Assembly (NCBI RefSeq): GCF_006345805.1 | Contig: NW_021828803.1 | Span: 1 to 7,675 of the forward strand | DNA from: Octopus sinensis | Taxonomy: Eukaryota | DNA length: 7,675 bases | Reading direction: 5' to 3' | In this document: positions 1 through 7,675 of the stretch, piece after piece | Numbering within the stretch: position 1 is the first letter of the stretch | Layout: each line of letters opens with the position of its first letter | The notes under the pieces: model-generated | The model's input: only the letters and a program-made list of their open reading frames with translations | Databases searched by the model: none | What the model was told of the DNA's origin: nothing | Translations under genes and position numbers: made by a program

Positions 1-95
1 CCAAGCGGTCACCCATCTAAGTAACTAACTAGGCTCGATGTTTGCTAACTTCGGTGATCGGACGAGAACCGGTGCTTTCAACGTGATATGGCCGT
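1..95 (-). rRNA. 5S rRNA-derived sequence, degenerate (probable pseudogene or 5S-type SINE head); 3' end lies beyond the left edge
   Basis: The reverse complement reads ACGGCCATATCACGTTGAAAGCACCGGTTCTCGTCCGATCACCGAAGTTAGCAAACATCGAGCCTAGTTAGTTACTTAGATGGGTGACCGCTTGG, collinear with invertebrate 5S rRNA from about nt 5 to 98. Changes fall in the box A region (AGTTAGCAAAC vs AGTTAAGCAAC) and the box C region (extra T; TAGATGGG vs TGGATGGG). The first ~4 nt of 5S are not recognisable. Confidence 0.9.
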
Positions 96-322
96 GGAGG
101 CGCAATGGCCTAGTGGTTAGGGCAGCGGACTCGCGGTCGCAGGATCGCGGTTTCGATTCCCAGACCGGGCGTTGTGTGTGTTTATTGAGCAAAAACACCT
201 ATAAGTTCCACGAGGCTCCGGCAGGGAGTAGTGATCCCTGCTGTACTCTTTCACCACTCTTTCTCCCACTCTTTCTTCTGTTGGCCTGCTCGCTTAGCCA
301 AGCGGGGTGGCGTCATTCGAAG
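96..322 (+). mobile_element. tRNA-derived SINE, family 'A' (head and body; 3' end replaced by another SINE)
   Basis: tRNA-like 5' end GGAGGCGCAA, Pol III A box TGGCCTAGTGG (106-116) and B box GGTTTCGATTCC (149-160). The body has ACTCTTTC three times (245, 256, 268). No 3' tail: the sequence switches into family B at 321-322. Confidence 0.8.
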
Positions 323-727
323 TGGCTGTGTGGTAAGTAGCTTGCTAAGCAGCCACATGGTTCCGGGTTCAGTCCCACTGCGTGGCATCTTGGGCAAGTG
401 TCTTCTACTATAGCCCCGGGCCGACCAATGCTTTGTGAGTGGATTTAGTAGACGGAAACTGAAAGAAGCCTGTCGTATATATGTATATATATGTATGTGT
501 GTGTGTGTTTGTGTGTCTGTGTTTGTCCCCCTAGCATTGCTTGACAACCGATGCTGGTGTGTTTACGTCCCCATTACTTAGCGGTTCGGCAAAAGAGACC
601 GATAGAATAAGTACTGGGCTTACAAAAAGAATAAGTCCCGGGGTCGAGTTGCTCGATTAAAGGCGGTGCTCCAGCATGGCCTCAGTCAAATGACTGAAAC
701 AAGTAAAAGAGTAAAAGAGTAAAGAGT
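321..727 (+). mobile_element. tRNA-derived CORE-like SINE, family 'B', copy 1 (first ~8 nt missing)
   Basis: Near-identical to 2301-2720. A box-like TGGCTGTGTGG, B box-like GGTTCAGTCCC, CORE-like CTTGGGCAAGTGTCTT, internal TA/TG microsatellite (476-508), and a 3' tail of tandem AAAAGAGT units (705-727). Confidence 0.9.

Positions 728-730
<3 letters not shown>

Positions 731-814
<84 letters not shown>
731..814. repeat. (GATA)21 perfect tetranucleotide microsatellite
   Basis: 84 nt of uninterrupted GATA units, starting 3 nt after the SINE tail. Confidence 0.98.
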
Positions 815-989
815 CACACACGCGTGCACACACAGTGGATCTCAAAGCAGATAAAGCTATTATTATTGCTCGTGAATATTGGATTTAAAAATCCTTTTGG
901 ATGGAAAAAGTCGAATATATATGTACATATTCAAATGTCACAGTTTCTCAGCTAGAAAGGAAGTGAGCATTCAGTGAATGGTGAAGAGT

Positions 990-1680
990 ATGATCTTTAT
1001 TTAAACAGAATTCTTGTTCTTGCGGCTCGAGTTTCATGCTTTGTGATGCTCAGGCGAGATCTCTCGACTTTCGGTATCTTGGATGGTTGTATACACCATT
1101 GAACTGGATGTTATTTTGTCTAAATCTATTATTTTCATAGGTTGGTTTCTAAATTTACATATTAGGACATAGTCTGCAGTTGTCATCGTTCCATCTCCTG
1201 ATTTGTTGGTTATTCTATTTTTCACTGATCTGCTTCGTAGTTGTTGATCTGTATAAGCTGTTATTTTGAGTCTAAAGTCATTAAAGATTTCTTTCTAGTT
1301 TTTCTAGGTTTTCTCTTTCCCTTTTACCAAGCGTTTATTTAGCGATTGATTAATCTGTATGCTGTATTTCAGATTTCAACGTTTCCGTTGTCCTATTCAG
1401 AAAGCATTCTATTTGTTTATCTATTGCTTAATCACATTCTGTTATTCATTAGATATATTTCAATGGCTGTTGGTCATTCATTCATTTTCTTTTGCTTTTT
1501 TTTCCTAAAAACAGTCTAAAATCACTTTGTACTTAGTATACAGGTGGACGAGGGGGGTGTTATTTCATCCAATGTCTCTAAAGCCTTCATTCTTTTCCAT
1601 GGAATAGTTTGCTTTGTTGTTCCGTTGGAGCATTGTTGGGCCTCCACTACTATTTCCGGAAATGTTGCGTCATTGGGTAT
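990..1680 (-). mobile_element. highly decayed Penelope-like retroelement (PLE) relic: RT C-terminus/thumb, Cys linker, start of GIY-YIG region, 3' end
   Basis: The minus strand is A-rich and gives, in order and across frameshifts and stops, PND...TKQTIPWKR, KEIFNDFRLKITAYTDQQLRSRSVKNRI, RRWNDDNCRLCPNM (CRLC at 1178-1167) and TSSSMVY. This order matches my recollection of PLE motifs KPTD...SIP, IF...AYRR..NL, CxxxxCxxC and CxSxNVIY. It is followed by a hammerhead-like relic (1016-1061) and AATAAA (996-1001). Matches are by eye and individually weak; boundaries are approximate. Confidence 0.5.
1016..1061 (-). ncRNA. degenerate minimal type I hammerhead ribozyme-like motif (probably inactive)
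   Basis: Minus strand: GATCTCGC-CTGAGCA-TCACAAAGCAT-GAAA-CTCGAG-CC-GCAAGAAC. Stem I pairs 6/8, the core is CUGAgCA (G8 changed to C), GAAA is present, stem III is palindromic (CUCGAG), U16.1 is changed to C, and stem II is degraded. Confidence 0.35.
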
Positions 1681-1852
1681 CTAACCAGATTTTAAATACG
1701 AGCTTATTCTAGTCCCGGCAGCAATGATGTCATTTCATCTGTCCTGTTCTGCAAACGTAACTGTTGCGTAAATTTGCTGCGTACATGAGACATGACAGAA
1801 TCATTTATGTAAATACAAGTATAACAGAGCAATAACAAAGCCTGCTCAGGTC

Positions 1853-2017
1853 ATATGTGTGTGTGTGTGTAGTGTGTGCGTGTAGTGTGTAATGTGTGTG
1901 TGTGTGTGTTTGTGTATGTGTGTATGTATGTATGTATATGTATATACACACACACATATATGTATATATATAGATATACATACTTACACACACACACACA
2001 CATATATATATAATATA
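1853..2017. repeat. compound microsatellite (TG)n / (TATG)n / (TA)n / (CA)n
   Basis: Interrupted TG runs followed by TA and CA runs. Confidence 0.95.
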
Positions 2018-2069
2018 CGACTGGGTGAACAAACGAAACAAAGTAGCACTCAGTATATTTAGTAGCAGT

Positions 2070-2270
2070 AAGGCGGCGAGCTGGCAACACGCAAGAAAAA
2101 ATGCTTAGCGGCATTTCGTCCATCTTTACGTTCTGAGCTCAAATTTCACGGAGATCGTCTCTGCTTTTCATCCTTTCGGGGTCGATAAAATAAGTATCAG
2201 CTGAGCACTGGGGTCAATGATTTAACCCCTCCACCGAAATTGCTGGCCTTGTGTCAAAGTTTGAAACCAA
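2070..2270 (+). mobile_element. tRNA-derived SINE, family 'C' (Deu/Nin-domain-like), copy 1, with 16-bp target-site duplication
   Basis: 5' AAGGCGGCGAGCTGGCA, B box-like GAGCTCAAAT, and central GCTTTTCATCCTTTCGGGGTCGATAAAATAAGTA resembling the Deu/Nin domain. Homologous to 4823-5012. Flanked by TATATTTAGTAGCAGT (2054-2069) and TATATTTAGTAGGAGT (2271-2286), 15/16 identical. Confidence 0.85.
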
Positions 2271-2300
2271 TATATTTAGTAGGAGTTACATATAGTTACA

Positions 2301-2465
2301 GGTGCAGGAGTGGCTGTGTGGTAAGTAGCTTGTTTACCAACCACATGGTTCCGGGTTCAGTTCCACTGCGTGGCACCTTGGGCAGGTGTCTTCTACTATG
2401 GCCTCGGGCCGACCAAAGCCTTGTGAGTGAATTTGGTAGACGGAAACTGAAAGAAGCCCATCGTA

Positions 2466-2496
<31 letters not shown>

Positions 2497-2720
2497 GTTT
2501 GTGTGTGTGTTTGTGTGTCTGTATTTGTCCCCCTAGCATTGCTTGACAACCGATGCTGGTGTGTTTATGTCCCCGTCACTTAGCGGTTCGGCAAAAAGAG
2601 ACCGATAGAATAAGCACTGGGCTTACAAAAGAATAAGTCCCGGAGTCGAGTTGCTTGATTAAAGGCGGTGCTCCAGCATGGCCGCAGTCAAATGACTGAA
2701 ACAAGTAAAAGAGTAAGAGT
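2301..2720 (+). mobile_element. tRNA-derived CORE-like SINE, family 'B', copy 2 (full length)
   Basis: Starts GGTGCAGGAGTGGCTGTGTGG, aligns end to end with 321-727, has an internal TA/TG tract at 2464-2510, and ends AAGTAAAAGAGTAAGAGT. Confidence 0.92.
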
Positions 2721-2845
2721 ATATCATTTTAGTAGCAGTTTGACTCAGTTGCACATTACGTGAACGCATGGAGCATATCCATCTCATCCGTCTTATGCAA
2801 CCACGAACTTTAAATCATGTGGCACAGTCATTATTATTATATATA

Positions 2846-2872
2846 CAGGGGTTGGGAAAATAATGGAAACAC
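2846..2872 (+). repeat. left terminal inverted repeat of the Tc1 element
   Basis: CAGGGGTTGGGAAAATAATGGAAACAC (27 nt), preceded by TA. Confidence 0.92.
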
Positions 2873-2955
2873 TCAGCATCATAGCATCATAATTTTGAAA
2901 TATCTGTAAAACCGTCAAAAGCATGTTTATTTTAATGCTTTTCTTTTATCATTAG

Positions 2956-3174
2956 CGTTGCTTAATATTAATAAATCTCCGAACGAAATATAAACAGTAA
3001 CCGCTCGACAACGTAAAGTGTACTAGCCATCTGAATGTGGCTAGCCACTGGGGGTGGGGTGTTACTGACGCTTTTAGCCCACGTCGATCTCCTGGGGCTA
3101 AAAGCGTCAGTAACACCCCACCCCCAGTGGCTAGCCACATTCAGATGGCTAGTACACTTTACGTTGCTTAATAT
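2956..3174. other. nested insertion in the Tc1 5' region bounded by a 13-bp direct repeat
   Basis: CGTTGCTTAATAT occurs at 2956-2968 and 3162-3174. Between them lie 40 unique nt (2969-3008) and the palindrome. Confidence 0.8.
3009..3166. repeat. perfect inverted repeat: 72-bp arms, 14-nt spacer
   Basis: 3009-3080 is the exact reverse complement of 3095-3166 (checked base by base). The spacer is ACGTCGATCTCCTG (3081-3094). Confidence 0.98.
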
Positions 3175-3240
3175 GTTTTACTAAAATTGCTGTTTCCTTT
3201 CAGATACCATAAGAAAAGCGTAATTAAAATTCATTAAATT

Positions 3241-4270
3241 CTTTCGGACTTTCAAAGGGGTCAAATCGTTGGTGCTCGTATGGCAGGCGCTAACATAACG
3301 AAAACAGTCGAAATGTTTGGTGTATCAAGAAGTAGTGTCTTGAAAGTAATGACAGCCTTTGAGAAAGAGGGGGGGGGAATCTTCGTCGAAACAAAACTCC
3401 GGAAGAAAACCAAAACTTTCAGATAGGGACCGTCGGACTTTTAGCCAAATTCTTAGAAAGGATCACAAAAGTACAGCTCCCGAAATTACTGCAGAGCTTC
3501 ATGACCACCTCGAGAACCCAGTTTCCACAAAAACTGTTCTCCGGGAGCTGCACAAAGCCGGATTTCACAAGATGGCTGCAAACAGAAAACCACTACTTTC
3601 TAAAACAAACGTTGCACAGCGTTTAGAGTGGAGTAAAAACCAACAGAACTGGTCCCTAGAGCAGTGGTAGAATGTTATTTCCTCGGACGAGTTATCCTTT
3701 ACCATATTTCCAACCACTGGCCGAGTATACGTGTAGAGACAGCCAAAAGAAGCATTTGAACCTGACTGCTTTCTTTCTACTGTTAAACATGGATGAGGAT
3801 CTGTGATGATCTGGGGAGCTATGCCTTGGAAATACGCTGGCCCAGTGGTTTCCCTTCATGGCAGAATTAATAGTCAAGACTATTTAAGCATTTTATCTTA
3901 TCACATTCATCCTATGTTTGCGGAACTGTTTCCGGGGGAAAACGCATTCTTTCAGGATGATAATGCACCAGTTCACACAGCTAAATTTGTTACTGAATGC
4001 CACGAGGAACATTCTAGTGAAGTTGAACATCTTATCTGGCCACCACAGTCCTCAGATCTCAATATTATTGAACATCTATGGTGCATTTTAGAAAAACAAA
4101 TAAGGAGTCAATGTCCTCCACCATTATCACTACAAGAACTGGAGACTGTTTCACCTGAAGAATGGACAAAAATTCCTTTGGGAACACTTTGTAGGAGTCC
4201 TTTGTACGAGTTCATACCTCGTAGAATTCAAGCTGTAATTGCTGCCAAAGGCGGTCCTACCCCATATCAA
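3241..4270 (+). pseudogene. Tc1-family transposase pseudogene (paired-like HTH N-terminus and DDE domain)
   Basis: LSDFQRGQIVGARMAGANITKTVEMFGVSRSSVLKVMTAFEKE from 3241, with no ATG retained. There is a +1 frameshift in the G9 run (3369-3377), then one frame to the end with stops at 3668-3670, 3734-3736 and 3794-3796. Catalytic D is at 3686-3688 (SDE), D at 3959-3961 (QDDNAP) and E at 4070-4072 (DLNIIEHLW). The sequence ends GGPTPY, with the expected stop now CAA (4268-4270). It joins ORFs 3359-3670 and 3803-4366. Confidence 0.95.
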
Positions 4271-4294
4271 AATAAATTTGTTTGGAATTTTAAG

Positions 4295-4322
4295 GTGTTT
4301 CCATTATTTTGTCAAACCCTTG
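4295..4322 (-). repeat. right terminal inverted repeat of the Tc1 element
   Basis: Reverse complement is CAAGGGTTTGACAAAATAATGGAAACAC (28 nt). The inner 16 nt are identical to the left TIR, and the outer part differs by 3 substitutions and 1 indel. Followed by TA. Confidence 0.92.
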
Positions 4323-4822
4323 TATATAATCACATGTACGCAAATAAATGCAGCGAAAAGAAATAGGGATTAAAGAAATCCAAACGAATACCTTGGTAAG
4401 CACTCTGTTTAATAAATCCGGCTAACAGAGTTCTGACGAGAATGGTTCGTGACGTGACTGTTCTATGAATTGATTAATTACTTTATCAAATAATTCACCG
4501 ATTAAACATGTCAACCACAATCCAATGGCGACAGCTCATTGGATCATTCGAAACATATGTAAGCTTATAAAACATTTCATGAATATAATTTTTCATTCTG
4601 TATACGTAGTATTTGTTTGTGTATTAACGTAACAACGTAAAGGTGCTCAACAACAAATGTGTTGTTGAATGTAATGTCTGTTATACTTTTGTTTTGGTAA
4701 AGTGATCTGATTCCTTATTCCTGAAGTTTTCGTGCAGTTAACATTGATAAATCTTACTCATACCTTTTTTTGTTGCTGTTGTAGTGTACCTGAGCACTGT
4801 ATACAACAATTTCATTCAGAGA

Positions 4823-5012
4823 GCAGAATCGTTAGCGCGGCGGGCAAAATGCTTAGCGGCATTTCGTCCGTCTTTACGTTCTGGGTTCAAATACCGCCGG
4901 GGGTCGACTTTGACTTTCCTCCTTTCGGAGTCGATAAAATAAGTAACAGATGAACACTGGGGTCGATGTAATCGACTTAGAATTTACAGGCCTTGTGCCA
5001 AAATTTGAAGCC
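4823..5012 (+). mobile_element. SINE family 'C', copy 2 (5'-truncated), with (ATT)n tail
   Basis: Shares AAATGCTTAGCGGCATTTCGTCC, CTTTACGTTCTG, CCTTTCGG.GTCGATAAAATAAGTA, CACTGGGGTC and GGCCTTGTG.CAAA.TTTGAA.CCA with 2070-2270. Followed by (ATT)n at 5013-5067. Confidence 0.88.
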
Positions 5013-5030
5013 ATTATTATTATTATATTA

Positions 5031-5067
<37 letters not shown>
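5013..5067. repeat. (ATT)n microsatellite (SINE tail)
   Basis: ATT units with two short interruptions. Confidence 0.95.
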
Positions 5068-5073
5068 GTGTAA

Positions 5074-5147
5074 CTTTTCGTCCTGTTTTGTCCCTTTATG
5101 TTTTCTAATCATGTGTGTCAACCCTTGTGGCCAATAAAAAAGGATTA
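5074..5147 (+). mobile_element. probable isolated SINE 3'-end fragment
   Basis: TGTTTTGTCCCTTTATGTT...CCCTTGTGGCCAATAAAAAAGG followed by a second (ATT)n array. It resembles, from memory only, an alternative 3' end of octopus SINEs. There is no second copy in the window to confirm. Confidence 0.35.
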
Positions 5148-5160
5148 ATTATTATTATTA

Positions 5161-5192
<32 letters not shown>
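5148..5192. repeat. (ATT)n microsatellite
   Basis: ATT array with one ATC unit. Confidence 0.95.
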
Positions 5193-5691
5193 GAGTGAGA
5201 GAGCAGTTCATGCCATCAAAGTGACACTGGGGTAAAATATACGAAGCCCAATATACCCATCATGACTACCCGTCTGATAAAGGTACACCAGGCACATGCA
5301 TCACAACCATATGTGCGCGACATGGTGATCTCATATCAAGATAAACAGCACATGACCTTGCAGGTGGGGCCCAGTTAGAATTTTCTTCAGGTTGAGTAGC
5401 CCATCCCGCTCAAACGGTCCCTGAATAAGGGTTGCTTAAGGATGTTGAAAGAACCACCATGTTTCCAGAGGTGAACTATTCAAACCCAAAGATCCCTCTC
5501 AACACATGGCTATGATGCTCCCCCACTACTTCTGCTCGTGATCAGAGATGCACATATCGTCAGCCACTAAGGGACATGCTCAACTGGTTAAGGTCAAACA
5601 ACTGACAAAGCAAATCTGTGGTATTGAGCAGAATATTTGCTGTAGCCCATCTTTTATAACCAGACAAACAATGTACATGATAACACTTCAA

Positions 5692-5693
<2 letters not shown>
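5193..5693 (-). mobile_element. probable non-LTR retroposon 3' fragment (non-coding) with (AAT)n tail
   Basis: A 501-bp complex, higher-GC block embedded between two (ATT)n arrays. On the minus strand it ends CTCTCTCACTC-AATAATAAT. I recognise it from memory as a common octopus interspersed repeat. No RT motif was found, so strand and class are inferred. Confidence 0.5.
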
Positions 5694-5726
<33 letters not shown>

Positions 5727-5755
5727 TTATTTTATTATTTTATTATTATTATTAT
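5694..5755. repeat. (ATT)n microsatellite
   Basis: ATT array with several ATTTT interruptions. Confidence 0.95.
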
Positions 5756-5760
5756 ATATT

Positions 5761-5813
5761 TGTGTGCGTGCGTGTGTGTGCACACATGCGTGCGTGCGCG
5801 TGTGTGTGTGTGT
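5761..5813. repeat. alternating purine-pyrimidine tract (TG/CG/CA mix)
   Basis: TGTGTGCGTGCGTGTGTGTGCACACATGCGTGCGTGCGCGTGTGTG; Z-DNA-prone by composition. Confidence 0.9.
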
Positions 5814-5957
5814 ACAGAGACAGGGGGCGAGAGCATAGAGCTAGTTTGAAAAACAAGGATCGGTCCGTTAATACGACCCTGTTTAAAAAATTGTTGTAGA
5901 TATATAGTTGTAGCTACGGAGACAAAGAAAACTGCGAGGAATAGAGAAAAGGAGGGA

Positions 5958-6049
5958 GTGTGTGTGTGTGTGCGTGTGCGTGTGTGTCTGTGTGTGTGTG
6001 TCTGTGTGTATGTGTGTCTGTGTGTGTGTGTGTGTCTGTGTCTGTGTGT

Positions 6050-6094
<45 letters not shown>

Positions 6095-6126
6095 TGTGTG
6101 TGTGTGTCTGTGTGTGTGTGTGTGTG
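5958..6126. repeat. long (TG)n microsatellite with TC/CG/TA interruptions
   Basis: 169-nt tract; source of the CV/HT-repeat ORFs in the track. Confidence 0.97.
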
Positions 6127-6180
6127 GAGTGCGATGGGGAAATATGAAGGGGAATCGGAAAGTAGTGTGCTGAACTATAT

Positions 6181-6495
6181 AACCACACTACCGTCTACAC
6201 CTCTACCACTACCAGCACCACTAACACGACGACCTCAACAGCACCATACTACCACCAACACCTCTTCCACCATCACCACCACCATCATCAAAGCTACCAA
6301 CACCAACAGTATACCTCCACTACTACCACCGCCAATAACACACCACTGCAGCCACCGCCGCCACCACCGGCGCCCTCCACTGACACCATCGCCACCACCA
6401 CCACCACACCACCACACCACCGGCGCCCTCCGTCAGCGATGACACCACCATCACCACTATCGCCTCCACCACCGCCGCCGTCTACACCACATCAC
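6181..6495. repeat. degenerate (ACC)n low-complexity tract
   Basis: C/A-rich triplet periodicity with phase shifts. Internal 17-bp direct repeat CACCACCGGCGCCCTCC at 6362-6378 and 6415-6431. Confidence 0.9.
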
Positions 6496-6972
6496 TGACA
6501 GTTTTATATATTCGACGTACGGGAAATACTCGAGCGCCTGTTCCGCTGTTGTTCCTGTCGCTGATTCTCTCTGCGACGGCGACCATTGTCGTAGTCATTC
6601 ACCGTTGTTGTATATATTTGTGTGTAATTGTCGTCCTGCTCTCCATTCTTCCACTACACTATGATAATCATTTTATTTATAGATACACGCACACACATCC
6701 GTATACATAAGATAAAATAAAAAGTCCGGAAAGAATGTATTATTATACGTACAAATCCTACTCATCGCTTTGCGTATAATGCGTGTTCCCTTCCCAAGAC
6801 CATGCGTCCGCTAAATTTTGTTGGACTTTCAACCTACTCAATTACACAAAAGAAAGATATGTTAAAAGTTTTGCTTATTCTTACAGTTACAATAGGAAAG
6901 GCTCGGATGTGCGACCGTCATTGATCGTGGTTTGGCTGTTGTTTGACTGTGATCAATATAACATTATAATAA

Positions 6973-7003
6973 ATATTATATATATATATATATATTATAT
7001 ATA
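6973..7003. repeat. (TA)n microsatellite
   Basis: Interrupted TA run. Confidence 0.9.
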
Positions 7004-7238
7004 CGAGTTGTATATATGATATATACGTGTTGATATAAGTCGGATAATGCCCAGACAATACTGAGAATGTCCTATCAGTGATTGGATTTACCTTAAACTG
7101 ATTGATACGTACAACGGACAGGTAAGCAATTTAAATCGCTCATGTACACACGACTTTATTTCACACGCTTATGTATTATTTATTACAGAATATACAATAT
7201 ACAATATATACATGTATATACAGGTATATATATTATTC

Positions 7239-7308
7239 TTATCCAAGAATGTTCAAAGAGATTTCGAAGTTTCGGCCAGTTAAGGCATCGTCGGACTACA
7301 TCGGATAA
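7239..7308 (-). ncRNA. degenerate type I hammerhead ribozyme motif of the Penelope-associated kind
   Basis: Minus strand: TTATCC-GATGT-AGT-CCGACGA-TGCCTTAACTGGCC-GAAA-CTTCGAAAT-C-TCTTTGA-ACATT-CTT-GGATAA. Core CcGACGA at 7294-7288, stem II GCC/GGC with loop UUAACU, GAAA at 7273-7270, near-palindromic stem III ACUUCGAAAU, and bulged stem I (TTATCC/GGATAA and GATGT/ACATT). Three changes from the canonical GAGGCC...GGCCGAAAC...GUC form. Confidence 0.55.
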
Positions 7309-7356
7309 ATGGAAAATTATTTTTATTATATCAAAGCATAAAAAACAAACTATATG

Positions 7357-7360
7357 GTGT

Positions 7361-7398
<38 letters not shown>

Positions 7399-7456
7399 TT
7401 GTGTGTGTGTGGTGTGTGTGTGGTGTGTGTGGTGTGTGTGTTGGTGGTGTGTGTGT
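7357..7456. repeat. (TG)n microsatellite with GG interruptions
   Basis: Direct reading. Confidence 0.95.
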
Positions 7457-7506
7457 ATTTATAATATAGTACGTTTAAATATTTGGCAAATATGACCATT
7501 CCGAAA

Positions 7507-7615
7507 TATAAAATATATATATATATATACATAAATATACATACATACATACATATACAAAAACATATATATATATATATATATACACAAATATATACGT
7601 ATACGTGTGTGTATG
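7507..7615. repeat. (TA)n / (TACA)n compound microsatellite, possibly the internal tract of the adjacent SINE B copy
   Basis: TA and TACA runs leading directly into SINE B body sequence. Confidence 0.9.
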
Positions 7616-7619
7616 TTTG

Positions 7620-7675
7620 TTGACAGCCTGTGCTGGTGTGCAAGCGTCCCTGTATTTTAGCGGTTCGGCAAAACA
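7620..7675 (+). mobile_element. SINE family 'B', copy 3, older partial copy running off the right edge
   Basis: TTGACAGCCTGTGCTGGTGTGCAAGCGTCCCTGTATTTTAGCGGTTCGGCAAAA aligns with 541-594; TTAGCGGTTCGGCAAAA (17 nt) is identical. Confidence 0.8.

What the first reader, a model, noticed from the sequence alone, without database searches (positions are those of the whole stretch)
3009..3166. Perfect 72-bp palindrome inside a heavily decayed transposon
Seen: there are zero mismatches over 72 bp with a 14-nt loop, while the host element has three stops, a frameshift, lost start and stop codons, and TIRs differing at four positions. Each arm has sub-structure: palindrome GTGGCTAGCCAC (3037-3048), hairpin CTAGCCA/TGGCTAG (3023-3044) and GGGGGTGGGG. 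Inference: it is either very young or kept identical by arm-to-arm conversion. It lies upstream of the transposase, so a transcript would carry a long dsRNA hairpin, a candidate Dicer (endo-siRNA) or ADAR substrate (A-to-I editing is extensive in coleoid cephalopods). As DNA it could extrude a cruciform.
Basis: partly seen in the sequence, partly recalled or inferred. Interest (0 to 1): 0.72.

Follow-up and report, generated by a model that had tools for sequence, protein, structure and literature searches.

The report
Young fold-back retroelement inside old transposon
The perfect 72-bp palindrome is real, but it is a recently inserted fragment of a small Penelope-type (hammerhead-ribozyme) retroelement whose integration routinely creates inverted duplicates, so its perfection most likely reflects youth rather than conversion or a special function.

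Summary
Observation confirmed: arms 3009-3080 and 3095-3166 are 72/72 complementary with a 14-nt loop.

The palindrome does not belong to the decayed Tc1 element. It is a separate ~198-bp insertion (2969-3166) flanked by an 11-13-bp target-site duplication (CGTTGCTTAATAT). At least 19 Tc1 paralogues carry that sequence once, uninterrupted.

The insert belongs to a family with a ~358-bp unit and thousands of candidate copies in this 2.72-Gb genome. Copies show the Penelope-like element (PLE) / animal "non-LTR retrozyme" signature:
- two alternative fixed ends 40-48 bp apart (the "tail");
- in-phase partial tandems;
- AT-rich, often (TA)n, targets with 10-20-bp TSDs;
- a type-I hammerhead-like motif;
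- often an adjacent inverted 5'-truncated copy.

In 23 of 26 fold-back copies one end has the tail and the other lacks it, and the inner breakpoints vary. The window copy is the short case (72 and 86 nt).

Arm-to-arm mismatch across 25 fold-backs runs from 0 to 9%. Differences shared by both arms are mostly subfamily markers, so conversion is not needed. The window copy differs by 1 nt in 198 from its nearest relative; the host Tc1 is 12-14% from its paralogues.

The dsRNA, ADAR and cruciform ideas remain untested. This is a new member of a known kind, of low interest.

The parts
2846..4322 (+). Host: decayed Tc1/mariner element. TA dinucleotides at 2844-2845 and 4323-4324; TIRs about 2846-2872 and 4295-4322.
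   Evidence: Pfam HTH_Tnp_Tc3_2 and DDE_3 on separate frames interrupted by stops. TIR comparison. At least 40 scored paralogues at 86-88% identity, from 2780 candidates.
2956..2968 (.). Target-site duplication, left copy: CGTTGCTTAATAT. 13 bp at most; 11 bp if the element ends ...CTTTACG; 8 bp if CGTTG belongs to the element.
   Evidence: The direct repeat is visible. Tc1 paralogues L031-L050 carry ...TTAG[C/T]GTTGCTTAATATGTTTTGCT... once and uninterrupted.
2969..3008 (-). 'Tail': the last ~40 nt of the 358-bp family unit (unit 317/319-358). It is the 3' extension of the sense copy, whose RNA sense is on the window's minus strand.
   Evidence: BLAST to the unit consensus: 2967-3008 = unit 317-358. 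The same tail, starting at unit 310-320, sits at exactly one end in 23 of 26 fold-back copies.
3009..3080 (-). Arm 1: unit 1-72 in cDNA sense on the + strand. Together with the tail it forms a 5'-truncated sense copy reading on the minus strand.
   Evidence: 98.6% identical to the unit consensus.
3081..3166 (+). Arm 2 plus loop: an inverted, tail-less, 5'-truncated copy (unit 86 to 1). Its first 14 nt (3081-3094, unit 86-73) have no partner and form the loop.
   Evidence: L020 shows that the rc of the 14-nt loop directly continues arm 1 in longer copies.
3162..3174 (.). Target-site duplication, right copy: CGTTGCTTAATAT. It overlaps the last 5 nt of arm 2.

Best explanation
The palindrome is a nested, recent, dead-on-arrival insertion of a short non-autonomous retroelement into the 5' untranslated part of an old Tc1/mariner pseudogene. 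The element belongs to a family with a ~358-bp unit. That family carries the integration signature of Penelope-like elements (PLEs) and their non-coding derivatives, the animal 'non-LTR retrozymes'.

Proposed mechanism (inferred). A PLE reverse transcriptase/GIY-YIG endonuclease supplied in trans cut an AT-rich target with a 11-13-bp stagger. It then primed cDNA synthesis from both target strands on the same region of the template RNA. Two neighbouring internal start sites were used: the 'tail' site (unit ~317) on one strand and the tail-less site (unit 1) on the other. One cDNA stopped after tail + 72 nt and the other after 86 nt. Joining their 3' ends put two copies of the same 72 nt in inverted orientation, with the extra 14 nt as loop.

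On this reading the arms are identical because they were copied from one template a short time ago, not because they correct each other.

Shown here: the separate insertion with a TSD and an empty site; the family architecture; the youth of this copy; the decay of arms in older copies. Inferred: the PLE machinery and priming from both strands.

Confidence by part: about 0.97 that this is a nested insertion of a dispersed repeat with a TSD; about 0.8 that the family is PLE-type/retrozyme; about 0.6 for two-site priming on both strands as the origin of the fold-back.
For: (1) Foreign insert. More than 100 genomic matches to 2990-3185 share no Tc1 flank; similarity is limited to window 2967-3166.

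(2) Empty site. A query joining the two flanks with one TSD copy matches at least 40 Tc1 paralogues end to end. In L031-L050 the site reads GTTGCTTAATAT once.

(3) Family architecture over 45 independent loci:
- copies read [tail from unit 310-320 to 358][0-2 full in-phase units][1..x][inverted y..1], with x and y varying independently (x 37-306);
- 23 of 26 fold-backs have the tail at one end and a tail-less end (unit 1-5) at the other, and none has two tails or none;
- all 23 have 10-20-bp AT-rich TSDs, about 9 of them inside (TA)n;
- one-armed copies exist with the tail (L018, L026, L030, L054, L060, L070) and without it (L028, L057-L059, L061, L072, L078, L080);
- 9 of 25 loci picked only for holding a full unit carry an inverted piece.

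(4) These are the published PLE hallmarks. Craig et al. describe 5' truncation, partial tandems, an adjacent inverted 5'-truncated copy, a 30-40-bp tail at one end, and (TA)n bias (PMC8557442). Frangieh et al. report that the PLE protein cleaves and extends both strands. They also report that RT starts at two adjacent internal sites, with the tail being the sequence between them, a signature 'unique to PLEs' (PMC11167929).

(5) Hammerhead. On the strand inferred to be RNA sense, the unit carries a type-I hammerhead-like motif. Sister family B hits Rfam Hammerhead_1 over the full model at 26.6 bits, E 2e-4. The fold is kept across three sister families: 97.5% of cells paired against 12-58% in slid registers, with 3 pairs changed on both sides. 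Unit length (358 bp), GC (42.7%) and tandem habit match non-LTR retrozymes (PMC7229834; bioRxiv 10.64898/2026.07.22.740005).

(6) Machinery is present. The genome has at least 4846 GIY-YIG candidates. It holds intact RVT_1 + GIY-YIG ORFs with 99-100% identical copies.

(7) Age. The window copy is 1 nt in 198 from L020, while the host Tc1 is 12-14% from its paralogues. Arm-to-arm divergence across 25 fold-backs is 0-9%. Three have zero mismatches: window 72 bp, L020 115 bp, L052 36 bp.
Against: No autonomous PLE sharing sequence with the unit was found. BLAST and nhmmer of the unit against four PLE loci gave only an adjacent, apparently independent copy of sister family B in L083. None of the near-identical copies of that PLE lies near the top family-B hits.

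The window's own family has U instead of the catalytic C3 in the hammerhead core (UUGACGAG). It gets no Rfam hit at E <= 10. The sister-family hit is below Rfam's gathering score (26.6 versus 34).

Priming from both strands is inferred from end structure and from in vitro work on a lizard PLE, not observed here.

A few differences private to one copy but shared by both arms (L008, L069, L011) could be rare source variants or conversion.

The reads behind this unplaced contig were not available.
Confidence: 0.8

Rival explanations
1. The arms are kept identical by intrastrand arm-to-arm gene conversion, or by selection for a perfect hairpin.
For: Zero mismatches in 72 bp. In several older copies the arms resemble each other more than the family consensus: L013 has 2 arm-arm mismatches against 10-12 from consensus, L014 has 1 against 8-9. 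L008, L069 and L011 have changes so far seen only in that copy yet shared by both arms.
Against: The shared differences of L013, L014 and L017 are the same in all three independent loci, as are those of L003, L006 and L008. They therefore mark source subfamilies. Arm-specific mismatches do accumulate (L017 7 of 77, L006 3 of 81, L069 4). At the family's typical ~2% arm divergence, about a quarter of 72-bp stems would be perfect by chance, and 3 of 25 are. The unique tail and loop of the window copy are also almost unmutated.
Confidence: 0.05
2. It is a MITE or Foldback-type DNA transposon: the 72-bp arms are terminal inverted repeats mobilised by a transposase.
For: Long inverted repeats, short length, a TSD and many genomic copies.
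Against: TSD length varies from 10 to 20 bp. The ends are asymmetric, with a 40-48-bp tail on one side only. One-armed copies truncated at variable positions are common. In-phase tandem multimers exist, the inner breakpoints of the two arms vary independently, and a hammerhead-like motif is present.
Confidence: 0.03
3. It is an assembly or library artefact: a fold-back chimera in an unplaced 7.7-kb contig.
For: The contig is small and unplaced, and the locus has no second representation in the assembly. Craig et al. note that such structures trouble assemblies.
Against: The structure has a TSD that matches the uninterrupted site in paralogues. It also reproduces the canonical family architecture (tail + arm + tail-less inverted arm) seen at 22 other loci on chromosome-scale scaffolds, each with its own TSD. 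A chimera would not create a TSD.
Confidence: 0.03
4. It is a retroposed SINE-like element, but the fold-back arose differently: by LINE-type twin priming, or by snap-back self-priming of a single cDNA, rather than by PLE two-site priming on both strands.
For: Variable TSDs and 5' truncation fit any target-primed reverse transcription. Twin priming (known for L1; from my own knowledge) also yields inverted 5' segments. No PLE partner was identified by sequence.
Against: Snap-back predicts that the inverted arm runs back through the tail into the flank, and that the loop always continues the first arm. Instead the inverted arm stops at unit 1-5 in 23 of 23 canonical fold-backs, and both x>y and y>x occur. 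Two alternative fixed 3' ends 40-48 bp apart, in-phase tandem multimers and the hammerhead-like motif are PLE/retrozyme traits, not LINE/SINE traits.
Confidence: 0.1
5. The hairpin is a functional RNA element, for example an endo-siRNA or hairpin-RNA precursor or an ADAR substrate, exapted in the Tc1 transcript.
For: A transcript through 3009-3166 would form a 72-bp perfect duplex. Weak, sub-threshold matches of related fold-backs to miRNA-precursor models only reflect hairpin shape.
Against: The host Tc1 is a pseudogene with no evidence of transcription. The copy is one of very many equivalent fold-backs with arbitrary stem lengths. Older copies decay. No expression data were available.
Confidence: 0.04

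Closest known systems
Penelope-like element (PLE) insertion architecture: pLTR partial tandems, adjacent inverted 5'-truncated copy, one-sided 30-40-bp tail (Craig et al. 2021, PMC8557442; Frangieh et al. 2024, PMC11167929)
   Same: One-sided tail; two alternative 3' termini; in-phase partial tandems; inverted 5'-truncated copy abutting the sense copy; AT-rich and (TA)n targets; variable TSD; frequent 5' truncation.
   Different: The family has no ORF (358-bp non-coding unit). The tail is 40-48 bp rather than 30-40 bp. No sequence link to a particular autonomous PLE was found. The window copy is so truncated (72 and 86 nt) that only the inverted duplication and the tail remain.
Animal non-LTR retrozymes: tandem 150-450-bp repeats with type-I hammerheads, proposed non-autonomous PLE derivatives (Cervera & de la Pena 2020, PMC7229834; Li et al. 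2026 preprint, 10.64898/2026.07.22.740005)
   Same: Unit size 358 bp (mussel units are 350-390 bp). GC 42.7%. Tandem multimers. TSDs longer than 4 bp. Type-I hammerhead with a 2-bp helix III capped by a palindromic tetraloop.
   Different: The window's family (A) and the older family C carry U3 in the catalytic core, where sister family B has the canonical CUGAUGAG. CircRNA expression and self-cleavage are untested. In the library searched, no paper on hammerhead retrozymes in octopus came up; of the four papers listed, only Craig et al. concerns transposable elements.
L1 twin-priming inversions (from my own knowledge, not checked here)
   Same: Two cDNAs primed from the two target strands on one RNA and joined at their 3' ends, giving an inverted 5' segment within one TSD.
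   Different: L1 inversions join different parts of the RNA, start at a poly(A) tail and rarely form palindromes. Here both cDNAs start at defined internal sites about 45 nt apart and copy the same sequence.
MITEs and Foldback elements
   Same: Short, abundant, long inverted repeats.
   Different: Asymmetric ends, variable-length TSD, one-armed and tandem copies, ribozyme-like motif.

Membership tests
PLE-type retroelement insertion (autonomous or non-autonomous) | One-sided 'tail': two alternative 3' termini a few tens of bp apart | tested here: met
   Termini fall at unit 310-320 or at unit 1-6, 40-48 bp apart. 23 of 26 fold-backs have one of each. Simple copies use either. Criterion from PMC11167929 and PMC8557442.
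PLE-type retroelement insertion (autonomous or non-autonomous) | Partial tandem (pseudo-LTR-like) copies plus an adjacent inverted 5'-truncated copy | tested here: met
   In-phase 1.1-2.9-unit copies (L052, L059, L061, L063, L070 and others). An inverted piece is present in 9 of 25 loci chosen only for a full unit.
PLE-type retroelement insertion (autonomous or non-autonomous) | Target-primed integration: variable TSD, AT-rich or microsatellite targets, 5' truncation | tested here: met
   TSDs of 10-20 bp in 23 of 23 canonical fold-backs. About 9 lie in (TA)n and the rest are AT-rich. Inner ends are variable. The window TSD is 11-13 bp with the empty site confirmed.
PLE-type retroelement insertion (autonomous or non-autonomous) | Encodes, or shares its terminal region with an element encoding, RT + GIY-YIG endonuclease | tested here: inconclusive
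   The unit is non-coding. Intact RVT_1 + GIY-YIG ORFs exist in the genome. No sequence similarity to four PLE loci was found except a neighbouring independent insertion (vs 58). Further PLE flanks could not be fetched.
Non-LTR retrozyme (animal) | Type-I hammerhead ribozyme in each unit | tested here: inconclusive
   Sister family B: Hammerhead_1 at 26.6 bits, below the gathering score of 34, E 2e-4. The fold is conserved with compensatory changes. The window's family has U3 and gets no Rfam hit. Cleavage was not assayed.
Non-LTR retrozyme (animal) | 150-450-bp unit, tandem arrangement, GC below 45-50%, no LTR/PBS/PPT | tested here: met
   358-bp unit, 42.7% GC, tandem copies. Criteria from PMC7229834.
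Non-LTR retrozyme (animal) | Expressed as small circular RNA | not testable with these tools
   No transcriptome data were available.
Tc1/mariner (host element) | Tc3-type HTH + DDE_3 transposase, TIRs, TA target duplication | tested here: met
   Pfam hits. TIRs with 4 differences and flanking TA. It is a pseudogene, with frames broken.
MITE / Foldback DNA transposon | Symmetric TIR termini and a fixed-length TSD | tested here: not met
   Asymmetric tail. TSD 10-20 bp. One-armed copies exist.

The most novel reading that the evidence does not exclude
Fold-back copies of these retrozyme-like families may be a substantial endogenous source of long double-stranded RNA in the octopus. There are thousands of candidate copies across three sister families. 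Roughly a third of the sampled copies have inverted arms, and many stems are near-perfect over 70-300 bp. Wherever such copies lie in transcribed DNA they could feed ADAR editing or siRNA pathways, and the window copy would be one such hairpin. Separately, the strict rule of one tailed end and one tail-less end (23 of 23 canonical fold-backs) would be an in vivo footprint of a single complex starting two cDNAs at two different sites of one RNA.
Probability: 0.12. Interest if true: 0.55.

Novelty: new member of a known kind. Interest (0 to 1): 0.25.

Why it matters
It removes an apparent paradox, a flawless palindrome inside a rotten transposon, with an ordinary cause: a young element nested in an old one, and an integration mechanism that makes inverted duplicates by itself.

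It shows that perfect palindromes in PLE-rich invertebrate genomes should first be checked against repeat families and for a TSD before conversion or function is invoked.

As a by-product it describes three abundant hammerhead-bearing retrozyme-like families in a cephalopod genome. Their genomic copies reproduce in vivo the features reported in vitro for a lizard PLE: two reverse-transcription start sites and priming on both strands.

Tried and rejected
- **Palindrome as part of the Tc1 family consensus.** Rejected: no other genomic match shares the Tc1 flanks, and paralogues lack the insert.
- **Rfam scans of full units, both strands.** Only sub-threshold miRNA-like hairpin hits and no hammerhead for the window's family. 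The hammerhead-like motif was then found by eye and supported through the sister family.
- **U3-A8 as a compensatory core pair in family C.** Not claimed, because G8-to-A sits in a CpG and is seen in only some copies.
- **L083 as the autonomous partner.** Its unit-like segment is separated from the ORF by a microsatellite and is antisense to it. It has no counterpart downstream of the ORF. Near-identical copies of that PLE are not among the top family-B hits. It was treated as a neighbouring insertion.
- **Rfam on four PLE loci.** No hammerhead listed.
- **ARAGORN on the window.** No tRNA.
- **A fuzzy-regex scan.** Timed out and was replaced by BLAST extraction.
- **Search for an allelic empty or filled copy of the locus.** None; the flank is unique.
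- **TSD search for one-armed copies.** Convincing duplications found for only L028 (11 bp) and L060 (12 bp, 1 mismatch), plus an AT-rich 17-mer with a mismatch in L064; short hits in L059, L067 and L075 look spurious. The variable ends may be poorly delimited, so no conclusion was drawn.

Full report
**Observation.** The window contains an exact inverted repeat, 3009-3080 against 3095-3166, 72 of 72 complementary with a 14-nt spacer. Its terminal 20-mer occurs once on each strand, against none in 200 shuffles. The region folds at -158.2 kcal/mol as RNA (z -20.6) and -96.7 kcal/mol as DNA (z -24.2). The surrounding element is a decayed Tc1/mariner. HTH_Tnp_Tc3_2 and DDE_3 lie on different frames broken by stops. 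TA-flanked TIRs at 2846 and 4322 differ at four positions.

**The palindrome is not part of the Tc1.** The window's assembly is 2.72 Gb in 13,516 contigs, and the window is the whole of unplaced contig C5274. Searching it with 2990-3185 returned more than 100 matches from 1879 candidates. BLAST of window 2700-4400 against the fetched loci showed that none shares Tc1 sequence. Similarity is confined to window 2967-3166.

The sequence CGTTGCTTAATAT lies on both sides of that stretch (2956-2968 and 3162-3174). I joined the two flanks with a single copy of this 13-mer and searched again. At least 40 Tc1 paralogues (2780 candidates) matched end to end at 86-88% identity. In the 19 aligned paralogues the site reads ...TTAG[C/T]GTTGCTTAATATGTTTTGCT..., uninterrupted. 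So 2969-3166 is an insertion with an 11-13-bp target-site duplication into an already old Tc1.

**What the insert is.** Longer relatives revealed a unit of about 358 bp. It begins CAACGTAAAGTGTAC and ends ...AAGCATTAATAAATCTC..CGCTCGA. It has at least 2866 candidate matches, many at 94-100% identity.

I annotated 45 independent loci against the unit consensus. The recurrent plan is [tail: unit 310-320 to 358][0-2 complete in-phase units][unit 1 to x][inverted unit y to 1].
- The inner ends x and y vary independently: window 72/86, L020 118/134, L063 100/160, L021 300/306, L029 258/176 (tailed arm first). The stem is min(x,y), and the loop is the excess of the longer arm plus occasional filler.
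- Of 26 fold-back copies, 23 have the tail at exactly one end and a tail-less end (unit 1-5) at the other. None has two tails or none. Three (L014, L071, L079) have non-canonical outer ends.
- All 23 canonical fold-backs have TSDs of 10-20 bp. Examples are ATGTTATGTATG, TAAAGTAATTTCT, AATAATTATGTATA, AATTTATATACTA, TGTTCTAATTAA, AGTAAAGGAATA, TTATATTTTTATA, TATCTTATATTC and AATAATAAATTT. About nine lie inside (TA)n tracts.
- One-armed copies truncated at variable positions also exist, either with the tail or starting at unit 1-6.
- Among 25 loci chosen only because they hold a full unit, nine carry an inverted piece.

The window copy is simply the short end of this spectrum: tail (2967/2969-3008), unit 1-72 (3009-3080), then inverted unit 86-1 (3081-3166). 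In L020 the reverse complement of the window's 14-nt loop directly continues arm 1. The loop is therefore the unpaired excess of the longer arm.

**Comparison with known systems.** These features match what is described for Penelope-like elements. Craig et al. list frequent 5' truncation and partial tandems that form pseudo-LTRs. They also list an inverted 5'-truncated copy next to the 5' end, a 30-40-bp tail often at only one end, and a bias for (TA)n (PMC8557442).

Frangieh et al. studied a recombinant lizard PLE protein (PMC11167929).
- It cleaves and extends both target strands and prefers AT-rich DNA.
- It starts reverse transcription at two adjacent internal sites of the RNA.
- The genomic tail is the sequence between those two sites, a signature they call unique to PLEs.

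The two alternative termini found here, 40-48 bp apart, fit that description. So does the rule of one tailed and one tail-less end in fold-backs.

**Strand and ribozyme.** The constant ends of the one-armed copies mark where reverse transcription started. The RNA sense is therefore the reverse complement of the unit as I oriented it. On that strand, at unit 216-173, lies CAUGCG-UUGACGA-GAGG-CAAUUA-CCUU-GAA-AC-UAUA-GU-C/CGUAUG. This is a type-I hammerhead layout with a 6-bp helix I, a 4-bp helix II and a 2-bp helix III capped by a palindromic tetraloop. It has U in place of the catalytic C3.

Rfam reports nothing for this family. A sister family about 72% identical to it (family B; at least 1797 candidates, copies 97-99% alike) has the canonical CUGAUGAG. 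It matches Hammerhead_1 over the whole model at 26.6 bits, E 2e-4, below the gathering score of 34. A third, older family (C; copies 90-95% alike) also has U3.

Across the three families the proposed pairs are kept in 97.5% of cells, against 12-58% in shifted registers. Three pairs show changes on both sides.

Unit length, 42.7% GC and tandem habit match animal non-LTR retrozymes (PMC7229834). A recent preprint argues these are non-autonomous PLE derivatives (10.64898/2026.07.22.740005).

The genome is rich in PLEs. It has at least 4846 GIY-YIG candidates and an intact 867-aa RVT_1 + GIY-YIG ORF. A second PLE family has many 99-100% identical copies.

I could not link the unit to a specific PLE by sequence. 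The one apparent link, in L083, looks like a neighbouring independent insertion (vs 58).

**Why the arms are perfect.** Across 25 fold-back copies, arm-to-arm divergence ranges from 0 to 9%. Three stems are perfect: window 72 bp, L020 115 bp and L052 36 bp. Most others have 1-5 mismatches, and L017 has 7 in 77.

Where the two arms share differences from the consensus, the same differences mostly recur in other independent copies: L013/L014/L017, L003/L006/L008, and the C at unit 62 in the window, L004, L002, L020 and L022. They are therefore source-subfamily markers, not conversion tracts. A few shared changes have so far been seen in only one copy (L008, L069, L011), so occasional conversion is not excluded.

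The window insert differs from L020 by one base in 198 and keeps the family's CpGs. Its host Tc1 is 12-14% from its paralogues. With about 2% typical arm divergence, roughly a quarter of 72-bp stems would be perfect by chance. Youth therefore suffices as an explanation.

**Mechanism (inferred).** A PLE ribonucleoprotein cut an AT-rich site in the Tc1 leader with an 11-13-bp stagger. Each freed 3' end then primed cDNA on the same part of the template. One started at the tail site and stopped after tail + 72 nt. The other started at the tail-less site and stopped after 86 nt. The two cDNAs have the same sense but sit on opposite strands. Joining them gives a palindrome whose loop is the 14-nt excess.

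Self-priming snap-back of one cDNA is disfavoured. It predicts that the inverted arm runs back through the tail. It also predicts that the loop always continues the first arm. Neither holds. A DNA-transposon (MITE/Foldback) reading fails on the asymmetric ends and the variable TSD. An assembly chimera would not produce a TSD that matches the empty site in paralogues.

**Function.** The window copy lacks the hammerhead region and most of the unit, so it is almost certainly inert as a retroelement. If transcribed by read-through it would form a long perfect duplex. Whether it is transcribed, diced or edited cannot be addressed with the data available. The same applies to the very many equivalent fold-backs in this genome.

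**Verdict.** The object is an ordinary integration product of a known kind of retroelement, and a newly described member of that kind in a cephalopod genome. Interest is low.

Noticed in passing
L083:5015-5059 (+); family A unit 216-173 (e.g. L067, L059); L100-L102, L014: Three sister retrozyme-like families coexist in the genome. Family B has a canonical CUGAUGAG hammerhead core. The window's family A and the older family C have U at the catalytic C3 position, yet each reached thousands of candidate copies. This suggests efficient self-cleavage is not needed for amplification.
   Followed up: partly
L002-L080: Every canonical fold-back copy (23 of 23) has the 40-48-bp tail at exactly one end and a tail-less end at the other. 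Independent choice of start site on the two strands would give a mixture, so the two priming events look coupled.
   Followed up: partly
L018, L026, L030, L053, L054, L057, L058, L070, L072, L078, L080: For one-armed (non-fold-back) copies of the family, my simple search found convincing target-site duplications in only two (L028, L060), against 23 of 23 for canonical fold-backs. This may be a problem of delimiting the truncated end, or a real difference in how the two kinds of insertion are resolved.
   Followed up: no
L083:1742-4773 (-); G000 places listed: A Penelope-like element family (RVT_1 + C-terminal GIY-YIG) has many copies 99-100% identical at the protein level, together with a series of 5'-truncated copies. 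That indicates very recent activity in this genome.
   Followed up: partly
window 321-717 and 2309-2719; partial third copy 7620-7673: Two copies of a ~400-bp SINE-like repeat, 88-96% identical, each with an internal TA/TG microsatellite, flank the region upstream of the Tc1. A fragment of the same repeat ends the contig.
   Followed up: no
window 2098-2281 and 4846-5025: A second dispersed repeat (AAAATGCTTAGCGGCATTTCGTCC...), 78-94% identical between its two copies, lies on either side of the Tc1 element.
   Followed up: no
window 98-172: A stretch that by eye resembles a tRNA, with A-box- and B-box-like motifs (TGGCCTAGTGG ... GGTTTCGATTCC), probably a tRNA-derived SINE head. ARAGORN calls no tRNA anywhere in the window.
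   Followed up: partly
window 6180-6490: A ~300-bp CCA/CCACC-rich low-complexity tract (repeat families D6 and D10) of unknown nature follows a long (TG)n run at 5950-6125.
   Followed up: no
window 1-7675 (= contig C5274): The window is an entire unplaced 7.7-kb contig made almost wholly of repeats and microsatellites: (GATA)n at 726-813, (ATT)n at 5010-5190 and 5690-5760, and several TG/TA runs. Its one unique-looking stretch, 4328-4810, has no second copy in the assembly.
   Followed up: yes
RNA sense of unit 1-60 (window 3107-3166 on +): An AC-rich tract (AACACCCCACCCCCA) and a stem-loop (GUGGCUAGCCAC.../...GGCUAGUACAC) lie just upstream of the tail-less terminus. They recall the AC-rich stem-loop where the lizard PLE starts reverse transcription. 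This is a resemblance only.
   Followed up: partly
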